Assembly (NCBI GenBank): GCA_021613535.1
Contig: CP075495.1
Coordinates: 14,012,001 to 14,076,000, forward strand
Direction of reading: 5' to 3'
Length of the DNA: 64,000 bases
Origin: Adineta vaga
Lineage: Eukaryota; Animalia; Rotifera
The position numbers and the translations under genes were made by a program. Of the stretch, positions 45,087-57,761 are shown piece after piece. The number at the start of each line of letters is the position of its first letter. The stretch's first letter is position 1. The notes under the pieces are model-generated. The model saw only the letters and a program-made list of their open reading frames with translations. It ran no database searches and was not told the origin of the DNA.

Positions 45087-46658
45087 TCAAGTAGTATTTT
45101 GTACATCTGTCATTGCCGAACTAGCTTTTCGTTTTGTTGATTGTTTCATTGATCGAGTTTCAGTTCGATCCGTTCTCTTGCGCATTTTTTGATATTCATT
45201 CTGTTGATATTGTGTTAATAATATATCATTCGTTAAATCATTCTTATCTAAATATTTCTGAATATCATATGTATTTATAAGTAATTGTTCTTGATTAATA
45301 AGAATATTGTCATCTTGATTATGTCTTGACTGATAGAATTGTACAAGACGAAGATAATCGATTTCATGTATTTGAGCAGGTACAGTATGACGACGTAGAT
45401 TAGAGAGGATTTTTGTTGTCGTTGTTAATTGTAAAATAGTTTTGATTGAATCAAATAGAATAAAATCGAATTTGCCGAGACTTATAAATGGAATTGTATG
45501 CGAACGAAAATGAATTATTCCACCACATTGTGCTAAGACACTAAAATAAAGAAGAACAGTTACATAAATCATTAAATAAAAGAAATTATTCCATATTTTC
45601 TTACGTTTTATAACTTTTATTTACGTCACGTTGATTTTGTACTAATTTAACATAAACAATTCTTGAGATTCCAAATATTAGATAATAAAGATCGATCAGT
45701 AGAAGATCTTTATGTAATGAAAAATCGATTGAAGATGATGATGAGATAATTCGCTCAAATGTTTGAATATCATTTGCATTTGCTTTTACAGTAAAATCAA
45801 TAAGAAATAATTGTTCTTGATCAGTAAGTAGTTCACAATCAAGTATAACTTGATAAGGAAGAAAACGTATTTGTTCAGATTTAATTATATATGGCACACA
45901 AATATTATTGATTTGTACCCAATGATTTGTTGATGAACTTTCGCCTATTGATCGTTGAGAAACTAATTATTAGAATAGAAAAAATGAATAAATATTTAAT
46001 AGATGAAAATTTCCGTACCTTTTTTATTGATTTTTATCGGTGTGATATTTCCTTTTTTTTCCACTAGATTCTCAGATGTATGATTTTTTTCTAGTAATTT
46101 TTTCTTCGTATTTGCTGTCGATGTTGCGATTCCAATAGGTATTGTTGGAAAAATAGATGGTGAGTTTGTTAAACTTGATTCATCTGGCGGACTTGTCTGT
46201 ACTATTTGTTTTGCTCGTTCAATAAAATCCAGAACATCTTCCCAATCGAGTAATTGATCGACTAATTTTCGAGAAAAATAAATAAATAAAACAAATTCAT
46301 CGAATGTTATTTACGTCCACCAATGATTGGAAATTTCAAAGTGCCATCCATATGCCATGAAAAAATGTGATGCATTAATTTAACTTCATTCTCTGTCATT
46401 GTGTATGCTTGAGCAATTGGATCTAAATTTGTAAATGATGATCGAGCTATTTCTTGCCATTGTGTTGAATTAGCAAGAACACGTTCGATATATCGTTTGA
46501 CAACAAAACGTCGATCAGAACTATGAATAAGTAGAAAATTTAGTGATGAGAAGAAGAAATGTTAATGTTTACCGATATAATAGAGCGATTATTTGATTAT
46601 CCCATTCTTCCCAAGAAAAATGATGTAAAGAAGGAGAAAGAACTTTATTCGTAGTCAT
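45087..46658 (-). CDS. Uncharacterised protein, multi-exon
   Basis: Spliceable ORF chain: HHFSWEEW...VKRYIERVL; YTMTENEVKLMHHI..WH; WVQINNICVPYIIK...LPY; GGIIHFRSHTIPFI (internally repeated motif). Confidence 0.6.
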
Positions 46659-46852
46659 ATCATTGAAAACTCGATCTAAAAAGATTTCATTTTTCGTTTT
46701 TGATCAGACAGAAAAGAAAATTTATTTCTAATTAATCATTCATTGAAATTCATGTTGAGTATTAGTTAGACAAACAAATAACTAGTATACAAAAACAAAT
46801 ATATTAAGAATTGTTCTGATTTCATTTGTGTTGGTTGTTTTTTGGATGGATA

Positions 46853-48841
46853 TCAGACATGAACTGAGTCGTCTTTGGTTGGAGCTTGTTGAGGAATAAG
46901 ACTTTCACGATTCTAAAAAAAGAGATAAACATTAAGAAAAAGACTTGACTGAAGCCTCTTCAACTTACTTCATAGGTCCAAAAACTACCAATATCAACTA
47001 ATATGGAAAGGACTAAACCACCTTGTCCGCTAAAGAAAATGAATATAAAGATTAGATCATTGTTTATTTCTTCCTCTCTACAATCAAAATAATTACTTAC
47101 CAATTAATCAGATCTTTCAATGTAATACGCATCGAATCCACTGGTTTAACCATATCAAATATTTCATTTTGAACATTATTGAATGGTGGTATTTCTGTTA
47201 ATGGTCTTGTTGATAACATTTGAATCATACCCTAAATTAAGAGAAAAAAAACGAATATTAATTATCTATGTTGTCCGAATGATCGAATTAGTTTACTCGA
47301 TAAAAGTAATTTAAATCTCCTGGATGTAAATAACCTTTATTATCAATATCCATAATTTGAAATAAATATCGAAGACCTTGTGAGGAATTTCGATTATCCA
47401 GTGCAAGAACGAAATCTAAATATGATTTATAATCCATTTCTCCACCATAAGTTAAACATTCTTGAAAAACACGTGTGATAAATACTGGTGTTAAAGTACC
47501 AGAACTGTATCTAAATGTACAAGAGAATCAACGTATTTTGAATATATTCTTGAACAAAAAAAAATGAAATTTTTACTTGGCTAATTCATCGCGTGACAAT
47601 AAACCATTATGATCTTTATCTAATTGTAAATAACGAGTATAAATTTTCGATGCGGATTGACATGAAAACCAATTTTGTTCAAGATCATCAGGATCCGCAT
47701 CTTCTTCACGTAACTAAATCGAGAAAGAAAAAGCAACTTATTTTGAAATTCAGTCTTAATTTACTTCAAGTAATTTATCCAAATAACCACTACAAAGTAT
47801 ATCTGGTATAGCAATACGTCCTGTACGTAATGGATCCAAGAAGAAGAAGAATTTTCGTACAGCTGTACAAACATAAAATTTATAGAATGTCTTTTGTAAT
47901 TGTGATAATTGATGCATTGTAGGAATTAATTCTAATATATAATCTTCTAAATCCTATTACAAGACATATACAAATGAATTTCATATGAAAAGTAAATAAA
48001 ACTTACAGATTCTCGAAGGTAACCTTGACCAACACTATCATAAAGTGATAAACCCATACGAGAATGATAATACCACATTTTACGCATGGTATATTGATAG
48101 AGATCAAGAATACGTACACGACCATAAGGATCATTGTGATAAAGATCAGCAAAGATTGTTGGTGGGAAAAGGTTTCTATAAAATAAATCAATAACAAATT
48201 TATGAAAGGATTTCTATTCAACTATACGCTATATCTGGACTTGATTTTTGAACTACACGCATAAAATCATCATAATTGATTTTCGGGGAATCAGGATCGA
48301 GTGGAGGTGAAGCATTTTCTTCTAATAATGCTAACAAAGACTAGAAAAAGAGAGATATCAATTAATTCCAATTTTTCTTTTCATTTCAATCTATTCTTAC
48401 ATGTACTTCATCACTATTAACAATTTCTTGACTTTTTCGATGCAAAAATAAAGCTCGTGCTTCTTCACGTAATTTTCTACCAAGTGGATCATTTGGAATC
48501 TATAATATAAATCAACATCAATAATAAAGAAGAAAATAAATAAATCGATCATTTCTATACATGTTCATAAAATTGTGGAATGGTTGGCATATGTTGTTGT
48601 GAATATGCTCTTGTCACATCTGTATGTGTATTTAATTTTCTAGGTGATATGGGTTCATTCTGATGGTGTACGTCGCGTTGATCTCTTAGATATCTTGTAA
48701 ATAAGTCCAATTCTAAAGAGAATATTGAATTCCTGAATGTATTTGATAATGAATTGAAAAGAACTTTAAATTACCATCTTCAGCTGTAATTGGTTTTGGT
48801 TCTTTCAATTGTTTCTTCAAATTTTCCACAATTTTATCCAT
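46853..48841 (-). CDS. PPP2R3C: PP2A regulatory subunit B'' gamma, multi-exon
   Basis: KLREEARAYFLHRKSQE, TRMGLSLYDSVGQGYLRESDLE, AVRKFFFFLDPLRTGRI, YLQLDKDHNGLLSRDEL, TYGGEMDYKSYLDFVLALDNR, NEIFDMVKP. Confidence 0.93.
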
Positions 48842-48883
48842 CTAGAACAAATAAATAAATATCATTGTTAGAGACTTTTTCTT

Positions 48884-50000
48884 TTAGAAAAATCGATAAT
48901 ACAATTGACGAGTGATTTTGACAAGAAGAAAACATGCAAGTATAAATAGAAAGAATACTAAATTAAAACAAACAATCACTAAATGACGACGTTCATGTAA
49001 CCATTGTTTAACTTCTGTCCATGATGCCCATAGAAGCCAACAGATAAAATGCGCAAATGGTAGTGGTACTTTCGTCATTAGCCATATTGTCAATTGATTA
49101 GCCCAACCGGGTGTACAAAATCGATCACCACGTAAACAAGCATCAACAATTTGTTGAGCAACTTGTTCAGAAGTTAAATTAACAAATGGTAAACGAAATA
49201 TAACAGATTCATTATGGCGATCAAATTCAGTATTCAATGTTGGTCCAGGTGTTACTAATAGCAGAGAAAGATTTGAATATTCGTTCATTTGTTCAATTTC
49301 ATAAGAAAGAGCAGTTGTAAATTGAGTTAGATAGGCTTTGGTTGATGCATAAACAATTGACGTGGTGAAGACATATAAGATATTTCACTTGAAATATTCA
49401 CAATACGAGATGGACGATTGAGCATGTTAGATAAATAATGACGAATAAGAGAAGTTGGCACATGTATATGTAATGCCATCATTTGTTCGAAAGAATTATC
49501 GTTTAATTCTGTTTGAAGAAATGGTTTTGTACAACCTCGTCCAGCATTATTAATAAGTATATCAATATTGACATTTTTTAATGAATCTATTTGATTGATT
49601 AGTTTTTCTGTTGCATTTAATTCTGTAAGATCTTGAATTATAATATGAATTTGAATTTTATCATTGATTTGTCGAAGTTCATCGACCAATGTATCCAATT
49701 TCATTCGTGATCTAGCGACCATAATTAAATTAAAATCATGTCGAATAAGATATCGACAAATTTGAGCACCAATACCACTTGAAGCACCTGTTACAAGTGC
49801 ATATGATGTTTGATTAGCGACAAGAGGTGAATAACGGATTGTTTCTTCGATGAAAATAGATAACCAATAAACATGAAAAGAAGATAGGCGATAATATAGA
49901 ATTTACATAGAAGACCAAGATAACCAACAGGAAGACAATGAAAGCAGACTAGAATAGTGACTGTTGCCAATGGCGACGAAGGCAATAAATACGAAGTCAT
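48884..50000 (-). pseudogene. Intronless short-chain dehydrogenase/reductase with two apparent 1-bp deletions (~49843, ~49357)
   Basis: ALVTGASSGIG, DILINNAG, IVNISS and YASTK are all present, but the hydrophobic N-terminus, Rossmann core and YASTK/C-terminal part lie in three different frames; no usable intron found to join them. Confidence 0.7.
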
Positions 50001-50095
50001 ATCTAGAAAAAAGGCTAATCAATTCTTATTATGAAATTCATATGTATATATATATATATTTTTCAATAAACAAAAATAAACAGCAGAAATTCTGT

Positions 50096-53000
50096 TCAAT
50101 GATGTATAGTTAAATTTGGATGACGACTTCGGAGAAATGTTAATGTAACACAATCAATATCTGTATTTCCAGTTAGGTCAATCACAAGCAAATTATTCTA
50201 AAATAAGTATCGAATAAGGAAAAAACAAATCAAAATTAGTTAACTTGTTATTATTTTACCATTGTTTGTTGTTCAAATAATTTACGTATTCCATTGGATG
50301 TGAATTTATTCTGTGAAAGGTTCAACGTTTTCAATTGATCTAAGCACAATTTTCCTAATTGATCAAATATACCATCCGTAAGATTATTTTCTAAAAAAGA
50401 AAAAAAGAAAATTTATTAAATAAAATACAAACCATAGACATAAATCACCTGAGAGATTGATGGAATAAATAAACATGAAATTTTCAAAGACTTTTAGTAT
50501 ACAGATTGTTTGTTCTAATCGTAAACTTAGACGTTGAAGAGATAAGTCAAATTTATCAAAAAATTGCTTTAATGCCGATCGAATATTCGAATAAGCCGCT
50601 AAGATAATATCAAAAAGATTTCAATTAAATGTAAAACACAATTCATTTACCCATTTTATTCACTTTACAAAGTTGTTCATAAACAAAAACTGGATCTTTT
50701 TCAACATAAGTTGCTTTTATCTAAGTACATACAATATGATATTCCCAATCTTGTCGATCGTAGAGTGTGACAGAACAAGCATAGATATTATAATTATCAT
50801 GTAAACGTTTAAGAACTTGATAACGAAGACTAGTTAATGTATCTGATGGAGACCTAGAACAAGAAATTCATTTCAAACGAATGTATAAATATATATATCT
50901 TACATTGGTATGCGAAGTTTTTTATCATCCTGTGTTCGTTGAGTTGTATTTGCTAAACATCGAATAATTCGAGTTGATAGATCATGTGATACAGAAGGTT
51001 GAAGAACAATTGTAGTTGTCGTTGCTGATGTTGCAATCGTATTCGTTGATGATGTGGATGATGGGCGTCGAGATCGTGTAACTGATTTCGGTGTCATTAC
51101 TTGTAAAACAGGTGATAATGATGGCGTGAGATGAGTAGGAACAGGTGAATCTTTTTTCAATGGTGAAAATAAATCTATATCATCAAAATTGATAAGATCA
51201 ATATTATTTGTTGATTGCAATGGAAGAGGAGATGGAGGAACAGGTTGTATAATTTTTGGTGGTGATTTTGTCTCAGTTGTTGTTCGTCTGCGTTTTCGTG
51301 CTGGTGTATGTGAAGAGGAAACAGATGGTGAACGCGATCTTTGAAGACGTTGTTTTCGTGTTTTTGTATTTGCTGAATGATCAACTTCGATAGGTTCAGT
51401 ATCATCAACAACCCAATTTTTTTCATTATTAGTTGTTCGTTCATATTCAGCATCAGAAATAAATGGTGTCAATTTAGATTTTTTCATTATTACTGGTGGC
51501 TAAATAAGATAATTAGTTGTTCATTTTCAATGATAAGAAGAAATATATTTCATATACTCGTTTATCTGTTGATGTTGCATCATCATCATCTGTTCGAATT
51601 CCTCGTCGAATATTGTTCATAATACTTTTATATTGTGGTCGTTTATCAGTCTTTTTTTCTAAGACATCATCGATACTATCATTACTATTTGAATTATGTT
51701 CAACTGTTAAACTGTTAATAATAACGAGAAAATAATATACAAATGAGTTTTGTTTAAAATTTTACTCACGTATCTTCTTCATCAGAATCGTTTCCAAAAT
51801 CACTACGAATAACTCGTTGTGTACAATATGTTGGCTCATCCTCTAAATATTAAAAAGTACATTTATGTTTGAGTAATAATTCAGAGCTATGAATAAATCA
51901 GAAAATTACTTCTCATTGATATTAAAAGTAATTCTTTCAATCGAGTAAATCTTCTTCGATCATCTGGTGTCATATTTTCATCATACAATGTTAAATAATC
52001 TACAGCTGTATAACCCTTAAAATACGAAAAAAAAGTATTAGTTCTCTTTTGTTTAAAAGTCGAAAATTCCAACTCACATTATTAGTTCGTATATTTGTTT
52101 TAGCACCATATGAAAGTAGAACTTCAATTATATCTAATCGTCCACTATTACAAGCATCAATCAACGTAGTAATTCCATTATTTGCTCTGACATTAATATT
52201 GGCTTTACAATCTAATAGATATCGAACGATATCTACATGACCATGATTAGCTGCTTCATGCAATGGTGTCCAACCATGATTATCTTGAAGATTAATATCA
52301 TCCTAAATAAATTCTTATTTATTAAAGAAATTAAAGATAGTTAAGATTATTTACTCCTTCTGAAATAAATTGTTTTACTTTTCTTAAACCATTTTTCTCT
52401 TTACAAGCTAAATGTAGACGACTTTCACCATAACAATTTCTCCAGACTTTTTTCCTCTAATAAAAAAACAACAACAAAATACAGATCATCAAGAAAAGCA
52501 AAATTAAATATTTTACCAGTCGACTTTTACTACGTAATGTTGAATCCAGTTCATTTTCATCTTCACCATCTTCATCTTCATTTTCCGATTCATCAGAAAG
52601 TGTTGCTAAAACTGCTTCATCATCATCATCAGTACCTTCTTCTTCATCTTCATCATCGTTTGATTGTAAAGAATCAGTTATTTCACTCGTCGTACGTTCT
52701 GAACGTCGTAAAATTTCACTATAATTATCTTCAGTGATTGGTGGTTGAATATTAGCCATAAATTCTTCTAAATCATCATCCAAATGTATACTAGAATCAC
52801 GTAATTTCATAGCAAAGACAAGTGCAACAGCCATTCTCTAAGCATAAAAAGCTAAATTAATAGAATAATATGAGAAATTTAGTGTTTACAATTAAACTTT
52901 GATCATTCGTAGATCGAGCAATGGTTAGAACTCGTCGAAATGTTGTTATTCGTACATCAACATCGACTTTCAATCGATATTCACATTTAATTATTTCACA

Positions 53001-54804
53001 AAGTGAATAACCTTGCTAAAACAATATCAAATCAATTACTTTGTTTTCATTTCGACTAAATATATATATATATATATAAATAGATATTTTACTTCAACAT
53101 CAGCTCGTGAACCTAAACCAATTCGACAGCTCATTTCTCGTCGAAAATAATCCATACTTGTTTGCCATTCTCGTAAATCTTGACAGATACTTCCAAGTGA
53201 TGAATAAATCACTGCCATTTCTGTTTCATCAAGATTTAATTCTTGAGCATGTTTTAACTAAATACAATTCATTTCGTTTACATCGAATTGATACTCAAAT
53301 CTCTACGATTTTTACTTGTTTTAAATAATAATTTTTGCTCTTTTCATTACGTTTTAGATGAGAAAATGCATCAGCACATTTTTCAGCTAATTTCATCTTC
53401 TTTTGAAGATCTGTTTCTTGTTCATAACGATCTTGTAATCCCATTACAATTCTTTGTACTAAAAATTGGAATTTACCTTATGAACTACAAAATCAGATAA
53501 GAATTACCATCAATTAGATCTCGTCTAGCTTTTTCCTTGATAGGATCACTTTTTCGATATCGATAGATTTTTAAAAGATAACTTTTTGCACCTTGATAGT
53601 CATCGAACAGAAGAAGTGCCTAGACATATACACATATCAGATCATCTAAGAAGGTTCGTATTGATGAAGTTCATTACCTGGGCAATGTCATGTAAACATG
53701 AAAGATATTCCGTCGTATTTTTTGCTAATTGAGCATATCGAACAGCTTGTTCCATTGTTGTTATAATTTCTTTCTTATATTGTAAGAAATTCGGTACACT
53801 TAAATAGAATGTCGAGACGGACGAATGAAGACGAGCTAATTCTTCATGCAATTGATGTTTCCTAGAAGAAATCGAATCGAAAAAGATATTCTTTACTACA
53901 TTATTCATCTTTAATGAACTCGAGGTATGATCAGATTCACGAAAATTTCGACTTACTTAGCAAGTTCAATCGCATTTTTTATATATTGACTTAATGCTTT
54001 CAGACTTGCACCAGACTTATCACCGGTTGTATATTTTTCACTCATTGCATTCGCTGAAATATTTTCATCAATAGGAAATCAAATATCGAAGGTGTCTTTT
54101 TCTTACCAATATTAATATAAGCTCGTACACGTTTTAATGCTAAATCTTGTTGTCGTTTTTCTAAATCTTTTGTCTTGATATTCTGTTTCTTTTTCGTATC
54201 AATATTCAATTGATAATCCAATTTGTCAATCATTAATAAACTATTTTTTGCTGCATCTAAACTTTTCTTACAAATTTCACGTGGTAATTGATCACGTTCT
54301 GCATCATGTAAAACATCATCTTGTAAATAACTTAACCATACCCAATATGTATGTGTTAAACATGTATAAGCTTGTTCTGTTCGTTCATCATCAGCGAAAT
54401 CACGTGCTGATGAGAGAAAATTTAAATGATGTTTTTCACTTTTTTGAAATTCATTTTTAGCAAAATAACATTCACCAATAAATCGATGACAATAAAGAAT
54501 ATCTTCACGTAAATCAACTGATTTTGCTTCATGTAATTCTAGTGTAAAATATTTGATTGCTTCATCAAATTTTCCTAAAGAAAAAGAAAAGTTTGAATTC
54601 ATAAAAATGAAAATATTTACCAGCAGATCGACAAGCTTCAGCTGTTTCATTATAAATATCGATTTTTTCTCTCGGATTTCTTCCAGTAGCATGACGAATC
54701 CGTTCAGCTTCTTTTAAAAGTTCTAGAATGATTGAAATGAACTTTAGCTCAATATATAATTATTCTTTTGAATGAAATTTACTTTGAAGTCTTTTATCAT
54801 CCAT
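50096..54804 (-). CDS. TONSL: Tonsoku-like DNA repair protein (TPR - acidic - ankyrin - UBL-like - short LRR), multi-exon
   Basis: N-terminal TPRs (CHRFIGECY), acidic tract, ankyrins NCYGESRLH / DNHGWTPLHEAANHG / GITTLIDA, KLRIP, C-terminal LNLSQN / IDLTGN. Confidence 0.88.
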
Positions 54805-54897
54805 TAGGTTGTGTAGACATCTACAAAAATAAATAAAATTCTCTATTTCAATTTTGTTTCTAACAAAATTCTATTTTTTCTAAATAAATAATTTCTA

Positions 54898-55420
54898 TCA
54901 TAATTGAATCTGTTCTTTTAATTCATCGATAAGACTTTTATAATTCGATAATAAATGTAAGATATTTGATAATTTTTCCTGATTATCTTTTGTTATCATC
55001 GATGATGAATGATCAATAGTGATTTTATTCAATGTCGATTGATGGTCAATAATTTTCCTGGATTAGAAAGGAAAACAAAACTAAAGAAATGATATATAAC
55101 CTTGACAATCATCTCGATTACCATTGACAACCATCATAAACTTCACGTGTTAATCGTATGTCACCTTGTAATGGTTCATATTGCTTTTTTGTTTGTTGAA
55201 TTTGTTTTTTGTTCGATTCATTAGTTAAATAATTATCAACATTAACGTCATCATTATCATTCATTGGAAGATCAATTAAAAAAAAATGTCGTTCACATAG
55301 ACCATTTGTATACATCGTTGGATGATTCAATGGTAATGAACGGTGACATTTTACCTTGCAGCAATGATGAAGTTTGCTTCCTAAAGGTAATGAATGTTTC
55401 TTTCGACATGATTGTGTCAT
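54898..55420 (-). CDS. Small uncharacterised Cys/His protein; 2 exons
   Basis: 100-aa ORF splices (intron ~55058-55121) into an open exon ending TGA at 54898; C-x3-C...GLCERH and GDIR...YDGCQWK weakly resemble a Capicua-L-type zinc module. Confidence 0.5.
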
Positions 55421-55919
55421 TTTTCAATATTTTAGAAATCAATATGAACGTAGTCGAATCGTTCTACTAAACAAAAGAATTTGTCATTTGTTCGTTCGCT
55501 AAATTTCAATTGGTTCAAGAAATAAACGAACAAAAGTTATGTAGAATGTAGAGGGTGTAGAAATGATAAAACTTAGTTAGATCGAAGAAAATTTTCTGTT
55601 TTGTTTTCTTAGATAAATAAATAAATGAATTAATATATGTAACTCATATATATATATATATATTTATATATTTATATTTGCGAGATTTTGTATTGTTTTT
55701 GGTTATGTGAATTAAAATGAATAAATTGTTAAAGTATTCATTTGTTAAATTATAATGAAGAGATTCAGATTGTTATGAAAATTAAAAAAATGAAACAATA
55801 AAATTGATAGTTGCATTGAAAAAAACAGCAAAGAACGTGCATAACAATTTCTTTTGTATTTTTCTGTGATATTAATGGTTTTATTTATTCTAAAAGAAAA
55901 GTGAGCAAAAAAATGCGCT

Positions 55920-57761
55920 CTATTGAGTAAATGTTTGTTGGGAGGAATAGGATTCGTAGCTACTGCTACCACCACCAACAGCACCATTGCTTGATTCAAC
56001 AAGACCAAGATTACCAAATTGAGCATCAAGACCTCCGGTATATCCGTTAGCACCAGCACCACCAGCATTTGCACTATAAGTGGAAGAGGATTCGTAGCTG
56101 CTTGATGCAAAACCACCACCAACACCACCGTCGCCGCCACTAACATTACCATTGACGACATCGAAACCAGCACCTCCTTGAACGGATGAAAACCCATTGA
56201 GTGAAGATGAACCAAGATCAAAACCACTAGCACTACCACTTGATTGAAAACTTTCAAAATTCGAAGATTCAAATGATGAAGTTGAATTGGCAGGAGGCGA
56301 CTACCAATGACGAAAACAAACATAAGATTATAAAAAAAACTGAATGTTCGAGACTTACGATATCTTCTACAACACCAGCTTGTCGAGCGTGTGAAATAAG
56401 AGTTTGAGCATCTTCTAATTGAGCACCGTAACGTGCAACATAGTCAGCAGGATTAGCACGTTGTATACCCAAGTTTTGAAAACGACGAACAACTTGAGCC
56501 TTGGGTGCTTCATAACTATATAAAGATAGTAATTAGTACATGTGTCAGTCAATTAATCAAGGTTTTATTTATACTAAATAATAATGTTACGCGGTTTTTG
56601 TAGGACTGGAGGCGGGGCACGTTGAACAATAACTTGACGTTTTTGTGTCAATCGATATGGTAACCAACGTTCAACGATAACATCACGTGGTCTAGGTGGG
56701 ACAGGAGGAAGACGTTCAATGATGACTGAACGAGGTGGGACAGGTAAAGCTGGAAGCATTTTTGTAATAACTATAAAAAAAGAAACAACGAGAAATATTA
56801 ATCTTTTTCATACACTACGCTCGTCATCAGTATGTCAATTGTTGTACCTTGAGTGCCAACTGCTGCTGGTAGTTTGGGTGGAGCTTCACGAATAACAAGA
56901 GGTGGCAATGTTGGAGGAGGAGGTGGGCGTTGACCTGTGTTACAAGATAAATTTGAAGATCTAGTTACAAGTAGATTTTTACATACGGATGTAAAGTGGA
57001 GGAGGTGGAGGTGGTTGAGGAGGACGAACTTCTTTGATAATAAGAGGCTAAAACATATAAGTTTTAGTTGTATTATCGATTTTCATTTCAGAGAGAGTCT
57101 TTCGTATACATACGCCTGGGGGAGCTATAGGTGGTGGTTGTAGAAATTTAACGATAACTCGTTGTGTATAGGTTTGTTGACCACCTGGAGCTGGTCGTCG
57201 AACAATTTCAGGATTAGGATCTTTAAAAAGACCTTGCGCATCTGTCGCATAAGTTGTTACTGCCGATGAACGTTGTTCGAAATTGCTTGAACCAAAAGCG
57301 GCTTCACTATTTGATGATGATCCTAGATGACCTTGTTGTGCGAAACCACTATCCAAACCATTGATACTCGAAGTACTACCAGCACCAATACCGCTAAAAC
57401 TTGAAGATGATGAAGAATAAAATCCATTATTAGCACCATTAGCAATGCCACTATTTAAAAGTGTTTCGCCAGCGTCAGCTCCGTAACCTGTTGAAGATGA
57501 TGACTGATAACTTGAATAACTTTCTTGTGCTCCACCAACATTAGGAGCAATAGCAAAGTCGTCTGACAAAAAAAGAATAAAATAAAAAGTCAGAAAAATA
57601 TTTACACATGATGACTAGACAATCACACCTAGATTTCTTTCTATAAATCTTTTTACAATAAACTTCGCTAGAAATAATATTTAAATGAACTTACTTCCAT
57701 TCAATACATTACCACCAGAGCTACTCTGATAGAAGGATGATGCTGATTCTTCAAAAGACAT
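55920..57761 (-). CDS. Gly/Ser-rich protein with Pro-rich core, multi-exon
   Basis: MSFEESASSFYQ start; core KFLQPPP..PGPLIIKEVRPPQPPPPPPL...VIIERLPPVPPRPRDVIVERWLPY...YVARYGAQL; G/S-rich flanks; GT-AG introns. Confidence 0.75.

What the first reader, a model, noticed from the sequence alone, without database searches (positions are those of the whole stretch)
45087..55420. Candidate five-gene eukaryotic operon with orphan splice acceptors (SL trans-splicing)
Seen: five minus-strand genes (small Cys/His gene > TONSL > SDR > PPP2R3C > uncharacterised gene) have stop-to-ATG gaps of about 93, 95, 42 and 194 bp. Each downstream ATG sits 0-20 nt after a pyrimidine-rich AG: TTTTTGTAG (54821), TTTTTTCTAG (50003), TTGTTCTAG|ATG (48842) and TTTTTAG (46676). 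The gaps leave little room for a promoter plus a 5' UTR exon and donor. Known: bdelloids perform spliced-leader trans-splicing, and nematodes and tunicates use it to resolve operons. Inference: one polycistronic pre-mRNA coupling a replication-repair gene, a PP2A regulator and an SDR.
Basis: partly seen in the sequence, partly recalled or inferred. Interest (0 to 1): 0.8.

Follow-up and report, generated by a model that had tools for sequence, protein, structure and literature searches.

The report
Candidate spliced-leader operon, bdelloid rotifer
Five unrelated genes of the rotifer Adineta vaga lie head to tail 42-194 bases apart, each downstream gene behind a splice acceptor kept across bdelloid rotifers, so this looks like a worm- or sea-squirt-style operon, but no RNA test could be run here.

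Summary
Five minus-strand genes have stop-to-ATG gaps of 93, 95, 42 and 194 nt, and each downstream ATG lies 0-17 nt after an intron-like acceptor.

The genome is Adineta vaga. It carries at least 58 copies of the bdelloid spliced-leader (SL) exon followed by a GT donor.

New here:
- Order, strand and tight spacing recur in A. steineri and in two divergent relatives, one with 47% GC.
- The AG-to-ATG distance is fixed per junction (16, 2, 0 nt) while gap length and sequence drift.
- SDR>PPP2R3C gaps measured in six sequences are 9-47 nt. Fused gene models show the pair also adjoins in A. ricciae and two Rotaria; it is adjacent in Didymodactylos too.
- Strongly conserved promoter-like blocks, including a CCAAT box, sit only upstream of the first gene.

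Not shown: SL addition and joint transcription at this locus.

The SDR carries two 1-nt deletions in this assembly. The D>E acceptor is weak, and that gap holds conserved blocks that could be a promoter.

Verdict: functional orphan acceptors are well supported. A spliced-leader operon is the best reading (about 0.5). The papers I searched report none for rotifers. This scan flagged similar runs elsewhere in this genome.

The parts
55457..55558 (-). Promoter-like conserved non-coding blocks upstream of gene A, including a CCAAT box at 55509-55513
   Evidence: Blocks are aligned and nearly invariant in 8 sequences, including the 47% GC lineage L033. No conserved acceptor lies before the gene A ATG.
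54898..55420 (-). Gene A: small Cys/His-rich protein, 152 aa, one intron (55121-55058). Function unknown.
   Evidence: Equals NCBI A. vaga I4U23_010137 (P0001). Model. No Pfam, NCBIfam or Atlas match. Single copy in the genome.
54805..54897 (-). A>B gap, 93 nt, with acceptor AG at 54822-54821
   Evidence: PWM score 7.9, top 1.9% of AGs. AG is always 16 nt before the main ATG in the 5 sequences computed. L030 shows the same arrangement by eye.
54797..54820 (-). Conserved 7-codon uORF. It starts directly at the acceptor, and its stop overlaps the TONSL-like ATG (54804).
   Evidence: Same length and same overlap in A. vaga, A. steineri, L011, L015, L030 and L033.
50096..54804 (-). Gene B: TONSL-like (TPR, acidic stretch, ankyrin repeats, LRR-like tail), about 1,140-1,190 aa, about 19 introns
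   Evidence: Ank Pfam hits. Weak LGN/Pins-type TPR matches. The A. steineri orthologue is 1,184 aa with TPR plus Ank. Model. Places 50383-50420 were not sent to any search tool.
50001..50095 (-). B>C gap, 95 nt, with acceptor AG at 50004-50003
   Evidence: PWM score 10.7, top 0.7%. AG is 2 nt before the ATG in 6 of 6 sequences; gaps are 84-102 nt.
48884..50000 (-). Gene C: intronless membrane-anchored short-chain dehydrogenase (SDR). In this assembly it is broken by two 1-nt deletions, between 49837/49836 and between 49360/49359.
   Evidence: adh_short Pfam hit. Alignment to the intact 372-aa A. steineri ORF. Each of 25 listed relatives aligns to it in three frames. Single copy.
48842..48883 (-). 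C>D gap, 42 nt. Acceptor AG at 48843-48842 abuts the ATG.
   Evidence: PWM score 11.0, top 0.5%. AG|ATG in 6 of 6 sequences, with gaps of 9-47 nt. Fused SDR+PPP2R3C gene models in 5 bdelloid species all start their second part at this Met.
46853..48841 (-). Gene D: PPP2R3C (PP2A regulatory subunit B'' gamma), about 463 aa, 10 introns
   Evidence: Exons are 82-100% identical to A. steineri. The Didymodactylos orthologue matches named PPP2R3C of many animals. Weak EF-hand hit. Single copy.
46659..46852 (-). D>E gap, 194 nt. Weak acceptor AG at 46677-46676, AATAAA at 46726-46721, and a 2-codon uORF (46663-46655) that overlaps the ATG.
   Evidence: PWM score 3.0, top 12%. The AG is kept 0-21 nt before the ATG in four sequences, with further conserved blocks upstream.
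45087..46658 (-). Gene E: 448-aa protein of unknown function, 4 introns. Last gene of the run; the next gene converges from the plus strand.
   Evidence: Model. Orthologues in A. steineri, L030 and L033. Five distant paralogues in the genome. No Pfam or NCBIfam match. Two AATAAA lie about 110-130 nt past the stop.
55745..57614 (-). Context: upstream same-strand gene U, 324 nt before gene A. Probably a separate unit.
   Evidence: Syntenic in A. steineri, A. ricciae, L010, L030 and L033. Its gap to A is 324-470 nt and holds the promoter-like blocks.

Best explanation
This is a conserved bdelloid gene run whose four downstream genes each begin at an orphan 3' splice site.

Most likely, RNA polymerase II starts at the conserved CCAAT-containing promoter upstream of gene A and reads through several or all of A, B, C, D and E. 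Each downstream cistron is then cut out when the 23-nt bdelloid spliced leader (SL) is trans-spliced onto the AG just before its ATG. At the same time the upstream cistron is cleaved and polyadenylated in the short GU-rich spacer. That is a single-SL operon of the tunicate type, or the nematode SL1 type.

Shown:
- the gene layout and the quality of the acceptors;
- conservation of the acceptors and of the gene linkage;
- SL RNA genes in this genome.

Inferred:
- SL use at these AGs (I put it at about 0.8 for A>B, B>C and C>D, and about 0.6 for D>E);
- joint transcription (about 0.6 for C-D, about 0.4 for all five).
For: - Gaps of 93, 95, 42 and 194 nt on one strand.
- Three acceptors score like real intron acceptors.
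- The AG-to-ATG distance is invariant per junction (16, 2 and 0 nt) across up to six sequences, while gap length (66-130, 84-102 and 9-47 nt) and gap sequence drift. This holds even in a 47% GC lineage.
- The C>D gap is only 9 nt in L030, which leaves no room for a promoter, a 5' exon or a donor.
- The order U>A>B>C>D>E is kept in A. steineri, L030 and L033.
- C>D is also adjacent in A. ricciae, Rotaria sordida, R. magnacalcarata and Didymodactylos.
- Promoter-like blocks with a CCAAT box are conserved in 8 sequences upstream of gene A only.
- At least 58 copies of the SL exon followed by a GT donor in this genome.
- More than 50% of bdelloid mRNAs carry the SL (PMC1925144, citing the 2005 discovery paper).
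- Canonical AATAAA is mostly missing from the inner gaps. It lies past gene E's stop in A. vaga, and by eye after gene U in most relatives, though not in A. vaga.
- TTTGT motifs run at 18 per kb in the gaps against 5 per kb in introns. This is a post hoc test.
Against: - No RNA evidence at this locus. No SL-joined read and no junction-spanning transcript was seen.
- Bdelloids trans-splice most genes, so an acceptor does not prove an operon. In Didymodactylos the SDR keeps its acceptor although its upstream neighbour, a kinesin, lies 2 kb away.
- The D>E acceptor is weak, and that gap has conserved blocks that could be a promoter.
- Synteny in L033 extends beyond the run, so linkage alone is not special there.
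- The TONSL ohnologue on contig 5 has different neighbours.
Confidence: 0.5

Rival explanations
1. Compact but independent genes. Each downstream gene has its own promoter inside or at the end of the upstream gene. It makes a short outron that is removed by SL trans-splicing at the conserved AG. The transcription units overlap, but there is no polycistronic precursor.
For: - SL trans-splicing is general in bdelloids (PMC1925144).
- The Didymodactylos SDR has the same acceptor without TONSL upstream.
- The D>E gap (139-194 nt) carries conserved blocks besides the acceptor.
- Synteny is also kept outside the run in L033.
Against: - C>D gaps of 9-47 nt would force a promoter and a transcription start inside the conserved SDR coding sequence.
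- No conserved promoter-like block comparable to the one upstream of gene A is seen in the A>B, B>C or C>D gaps.
Confidence: 0.33
2. The acceptors are used in cis. Either an SDR-PPP2R3C fusion mRNA forms, as in the public gene models, or a shared upstream 5' exon is spliced alternatively to each gene.
For: - Public annotations fuse SDR and PPP2R3C in five bdelloid species.
- In-phase GT sites exist near the SDR end in every species.
Against: - The fused models use at least three different donors in the four species with a comparable SDR tail, but always the same acceptor, as expected of prediction artefacts.
- The one GT shared by all six is a Val codon whose third base drifts T/A/G.
- The SDR stop codon and its C-terminal membrane segment are conserved.
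- Gap lengths are not multiples of three.
- PPP2R3C of other animals has no SDR part.
- A shared 5' exon would need introns of up to about 9 kb (it would have to skip genes A to D), whereas the introns of these genes are about 40-130 nt.
Confidence: 0.07
3. Chance. AT-rich spacers happen to contain T-rich AGs, and the tight packing has no functional meaning.
For: - About 14% of random ATGs in the window have an AG as good as the weakest site within 25 nt upstream.
- The D>E site alone is not significant.
Against: - Three sites are individually significant.
- All four keep their position across divergent lineages while the flanking spacer sequence changes.
Confidence: 0.02

Closest known systems
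Tunicate operons (Ciona, Oikopleura), resolved by a single spliced leader
   Same: - One SL type.
- Unrelated housekeeping genes.
- Very short or nearly absent intercistronic spacers.
- The acceptor lies next to the ATG (0-2 nt at B>C and C>D).
   Different: - A different phylum and an unrelated SL.
- SL addition and polycistronic RNA are not shown here.
- Spacers of 93-194 nt at three junctions are longer than my recollection of typical tunicate spacers.
Caenorhabditis elegans operons (SL2-type, and SL1-type with abutting cistrons)
   Same: - About 100-nt spacers (A>B, B>C).
- GU/U-rich spacer motifs that recall the Ur element.
- A promoter only before the first gene.
- The near-zero spacer at C>D recalls SL1-type operons, where 3' end formation and trans-splicing share one site.
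   Different: - No evidence of a specialised SL2-like leader. The SL copies found differ by single bases only.
- Inner gaps mostly lack AATAAA.
Chaetognath operons (Paraspadella gotoi, PMC12460157)
   Same: - Gnathiferan relative.
- Operons are defined there as genes less than 250 bp apart with at least one SL-bearing gene.
- No operon-specific leader.
- The spacing half of that working definition is met here.
   Different: There the SL reads were mapped genome-wide. Here the RNA half of the definition is untested.
Bdelloid SL trans-splicing (Pouchkina-Stantcheva and Tunnacliffe 2005, as cited in PMC3795323 and PMC1925144)
   Same: The same 23-nt leader is encoded in at least 58 copies in this genome.
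   Different: That work described leader addition to single genes. [quoted passage not shown]

Membership tests
Spliced-leader-resolved metazoan operon | Two or more same-strand genes separated by short spacers (under 250 bp in PMC12460157) | tested here: met
   Gaps of 93, 95, 42 and 194 nt.
Spliced-leader-resolved metazoan operon | The organism has SL RNA genes and performs SL trans-splicing | tested here: met
   At least 58 copies of the SL exon followed by GT in the window's genome. Literature: PMC3795323 Table 1, PMC1925144.
Spliced-leader-resolved metazoan operon | SL is joined to the acceptor of each downstream gene in mature mRNA | not testable with these tools
Records of the window's own genome are left out of the contig look-up. 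SL-plus-gene junction patterns gave 0 hits in metagenome contigs.
Spliced-leader-resolved metazoan operon | A polycistronic precursor RNA spans the gene junctions | not testable with these tools
   Same limits as above. The Logan contigs recovered (L017, L018) keep their introns, so they are DNA-like.
Spliced-leader-resolved metazoan operon | No independent promoter for downstream genes; one promoter before the first gene | tested here: inconclusive
   Conserved CCAAT-containing blocks lie only upstream of gene A. The C>D gap of 9-47 nt excludes an intergenic promoter. The D>E gap holds conserved blocks of unknown role.
Spliced-leader-resolved metazoan operon | Linkage and acceptor positions are conserved between species | tested here: met
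   Five-gene order in A. steineri, L030 and L033. C>D is adjacent in Adineta, Rotaria and Didymodactylos. AG-to-ATG distances are fixed. Caveat: B>C is not kept in Didymodactylos.
PPP2R3C (PP2A regulatory subunit B'' gamma) | Sequence orthology to named PPP2R3C proteins, with EF-hand region | tested here: met
   Window exons match the Didymodactylos gene. That gene's PPP2R3C part matches named PPP2R3C of many animals at 43-55% identity. Weak EF-hand_6 hit.
Classical short-chain dehydrogenase (adh_short) | Rossmann-fold Pfam match in one intact reading frame | tested here: not met
   The Pfam match is present (E 2.6e-27), but the frame is broken twice in this assembly. Relatives are intact at 372 aa.
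TONSL | N-terminal TPRs, acidic stretch, ankyrin repeats, C-terminal LRRs; named orthologues | tested here: inconclusive
   Ankyrin repeats confirmed. TPR matches only weakly. The acidic stretch is seen in translation. LRRs and named orthologues were not tested. A second copy lies on contig 5.

The most novel reading that the evidence does not exclude
Bdelloid rotifers possess true spliced-leader operons that are conserved across the class. They include junctions with almost no spacer (9 nt), where cleavage of the upstream mRNA and trans-splicing of the downstream one must share a single site. One such operon tolerates a decaying internal gene (the frameshifted SDR) without losing its spacing signals.
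Probability: 0.45. Interest if true: 0.7.

Novelty: new member of a known kind. Interest (0 to 1): 0.55.

Why it matters
Rotifers are cited as a phylum that has SL trans-splicing but no reported operons (PMC7986045). That matters for the debate on whether operons arise readily once a spliced leader exists.

This is a class-wide conserved run with fixed acceptor positions and a 9-47 nt junction, which makes it a concrete locus to test. Four predicted SL sites and one predicted promoter can be checked with existing A. vaga RNA data.

It also explains why public bdelloid annotations fuse SDR with PPP2R3C, and it warns that such models are probably artefacts.

Tried and rejected
2. Exact-product look-ups for this genome returned nothing, because own records are left out.
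3. I looked for transcript contigs through the intronless SDR.
   - The two Logan contigs I could read keep their introns, so they are DNA-like.
   - The 1,211-nt ENA contig gave no DNA.
4. SL-tail-plus-gene-start patterns for PPP2R3C and for the SDR gave 0 hits in metagenome contigs.
5. The representative search with a PPP2R3C exon gave fragments and non-bdelloid proteins. It was no route to bdelloid mRNAs.
6. I searched for an ohnologous copy of the cluster. Only TONSL has a second copy, and its neighbours differ.
7. Function searches found nothing for gene A and gene E: Pfam, NCBIfam and (gene A only) the Atlas. PDB and Atlas gave only generic TPR and ankyrin hits for gene B.
8. Rfam found no family for the SL RNA locus.
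All searches were exon by exon, by reference, and CDS lengths come from coordinates only.
I redid it from coordinates.
Full report
**What is there.** The window is contig 2, 14,012,001-14,076,000, of a 100.8-Mb, six-contig genome. GC content is 31%.

On the minus strand I confirm five genes:
- A: 55420-54898, 152 aa, one intron.
- B: 54804-50096, about 19 introns. It has ankyrin repeats, an acidic stretch and TPR-like repeats, so it is TONSL-like.
- C: 50000-48884, an intronless adh_short dehydrogenase.
- D: 48841-46853, 10 introns, PPP2R3C.
- E: 46658-45087, 448 aa, unknown function.

Stop-to-ATG gaps are 93, 95, 42 and 194 nt. T-rich AGs end at 54821, 50003, 48842 and 46676.

I never joined exons into a spliced protein. 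Every search was exon by exon, by reference.

**More than chance?** I built an acceptor matrix (PWM) from 31 introns of these genes. It puts the A>B, B>C and C>D sites in the top 1.9%, 0.7% and 0.5% of all 5,623 AGs in the window. They fall within the range of true introns, with shuffle p of 0.02, 0.008 and 0.005. The D>E site is weak: top 12%, p 0.13.

**Comparative evidence.** This is the main new result.

The same order and strand (U>A>B>C>D>E) occur in:
- two Adineta steineri assemblies;
- an environmental contig with 32% GC (L030);
- a 111-kb contig with 47% GC (L033), although gene A is only 43-44% identical there.

Shorter contigs show A>B (L011, L015) and B>C>D (L017, L018).

Across these sequences the gaps vary:

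| Junction | Gap range | AG-to-ATG distance |
|---|---|---|
| A>B | 66-130 nt | 16 nt in 5 of 5 |
| B>C | 84-102 nt | 2 nt in 6 of 6 |
| C>D | 9-47 nt | 0 nt in 6 of 6 |
| D>E | 139-194 nt | 0-21 nt |

Spacer sequences diverge, but the AG-to-ATG distance stays fixed. A 9-nt spacer (L030) cannot hold a promoter, a 5' exon or a donor.

Public annotations fuse SDR and PPP2R3C into one 782-826-aa protein in A. ricciae, A. steineri, Rotaria sordida and R. magnacalcarata, and into a partial one in Didymodactylos carnosus. In the four species whose SDR tails can be compared, the models use at least three different donors, yet all five always resume at the PPP2R3C Met. This marks the fused models as prediction artefacts that exploit one strong conserved acceptor. 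It also shows that C>D adjacency is bdelloid-wide.

**Promoter.** The 324-nt U>A gap holds blocks that are nearly invariant in eight sequences (55457-55558), including a CCAAT box. There is no conserved AG before gene A's ATG. The A>B, B>C and C>D gaps show nothing comparable beyond the acceptor and short T/G-rich motifs.

TTTGT occurs at 18 per kb in the gaps, against 5 per kb in introns. I chose this motif after looking at the alignments, so the test is only suggestive. It could reflect GU-rich 3'-end elements.

Canonical AATAAA is absent from most inner gaps. It lies past E's stop in A. vaga, and by eye after U in most relatives, though not in A. vaga.

**Machinery.** The 23-nt bdelloid leader (PMC3795323, Table 1), followed by GT, occurs at least 58 times in this genome, often as inverted pairs about 130 nt apart. 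More than half of bdelloid mRNAs carry it (PMC1925144).

**What is missing.** No RNA evidence could be obtained.
- Own-genome records are withheld from contig look-ups.
- Junction patterns found nothing.

So SL addition and co-transcription remain inferences.

**Cautions.**
- In Didymodactylos the SDR follows a kinesin 2 kb away, yet it still has an acceptor 1 nt before its ATG. Acceptors therefore mark trans-spliced genes, not operons as such, and B>C linkage is not universal.
- L033 is syntenic beyond the run, so linkage alone is weak evidence there. L030 breaks synteny just outside U and E.
- The D>E gap has conserved blocks that could be a promoter or processing signals.
- The TONSL ohnologue on contig 5 sits among other genes.

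**The SDR.** Relative to the intact 372-aa ORF of A. steineri, the A. vaga sequence lacks one base at 49837/49836 and one at 49360/49359. The second lies just before the catalytic YxxxK motif. Each of the 25 listed relatives aligns to it in three frames. The other four genes, about 6.8 kb of coding sequence, have no frame break. A recent pseudogene or a null haplotype is therefore more likely than random assembly error, but reads are needed to decide.

**Verdict.** The orphan acceptors are real, selected features. SL trans-splicing at these sites is the natural explanation.

A single-leader operon driven from upstream of gene A is the best reading: about 0.5 overall, about 0.6 for C-D and about 0.4 for all five. 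The main rival is overlapping independent units (about 0.33).

The papers I could search report no rotifer operon (PMC7986045). PMC12460157 only mentions rotifers in passing.

Earlier notes of this scan describe similar runs elsewhere in this genome, two of them with SL seen on RNA (s1-489498, s1-484568). I treat these as leads, not as support.

Noticed in passing
window 48884-50000 (breaks at 49837/49836 and 49360/49359): The SDR gene carries two separate 1-nt deletions relative to intact orthologues in every relative examined. It is either a recent pseudogene or null allele inside the gene run, or an assembly error.
   Followed up: partly
window 54797-54820: A 7-codon uORF begins at the acceptor, and its stop overlaps the TONSL-like start codon (ATGGATGA). 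Its length and the overlap are conserved in six bdelloid sequences, including the 47% GC lineage. It may control TONSL translation.
   Followed up: partly
window 46655-46663: A 2-codon uORF overlaps gene E's ATG (ATGATATGA). It is also present in A. steineri.
   Followed up: no
window 54850-54870: A perfect 9-bp hairpin with a 3-nt loop lies in the A>B spacer. It is kept, with a shorter stem, in L011 and L015 but not in A. steineri, L030 or L033.
   Followed up: no
P0182-P0185, P0030 (public bdelloid annotations): SDR and PPP2R3C are annotated as one fused protein in A. ricciae, A. steineri, Rotaria sordida, R. magnacalcarata and Didymodactylos. The donor differs between species, so these models are probably artefacts.
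   Followed up: yes
G000 contigs 1, 2, 4, 5, 6 (e.g. L001-L006): SL RNA genes often sit as inverted pairs whose matches start about 156 nt apart, and they cluster on contig 5 near 9.88-9.93 Mb and 10.91-10.93 Mb. Several copies carry single-base variants in the leader. Rfam has no family for them.
   Followed up: partly
G000:C5:6135000-6139400 (L029): A second, 57-75% identical TONSL-like gene (probably an ohnologue) lies here with unrelated neighbours. Another same-strand gene starts about 300 nt after its stop.
   Followed up: partly
window 45604-45966; L025-L027: Gene E belongs to a small family. Five distant paralogues (28-35% identity) lie elsewhere in the genome, within long open frames of 289-527 aa.
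   Followed up: no
window 55645-55675, 53060-53080, 50050-50066: (TA)n microsatellites lie in the U>A gap, in a TONSL intron and in the B>C spacer.
   Followed up: no
The tool itself says this is no evidence of anything. I left the stretch out of all later searches.
   Followed up: no
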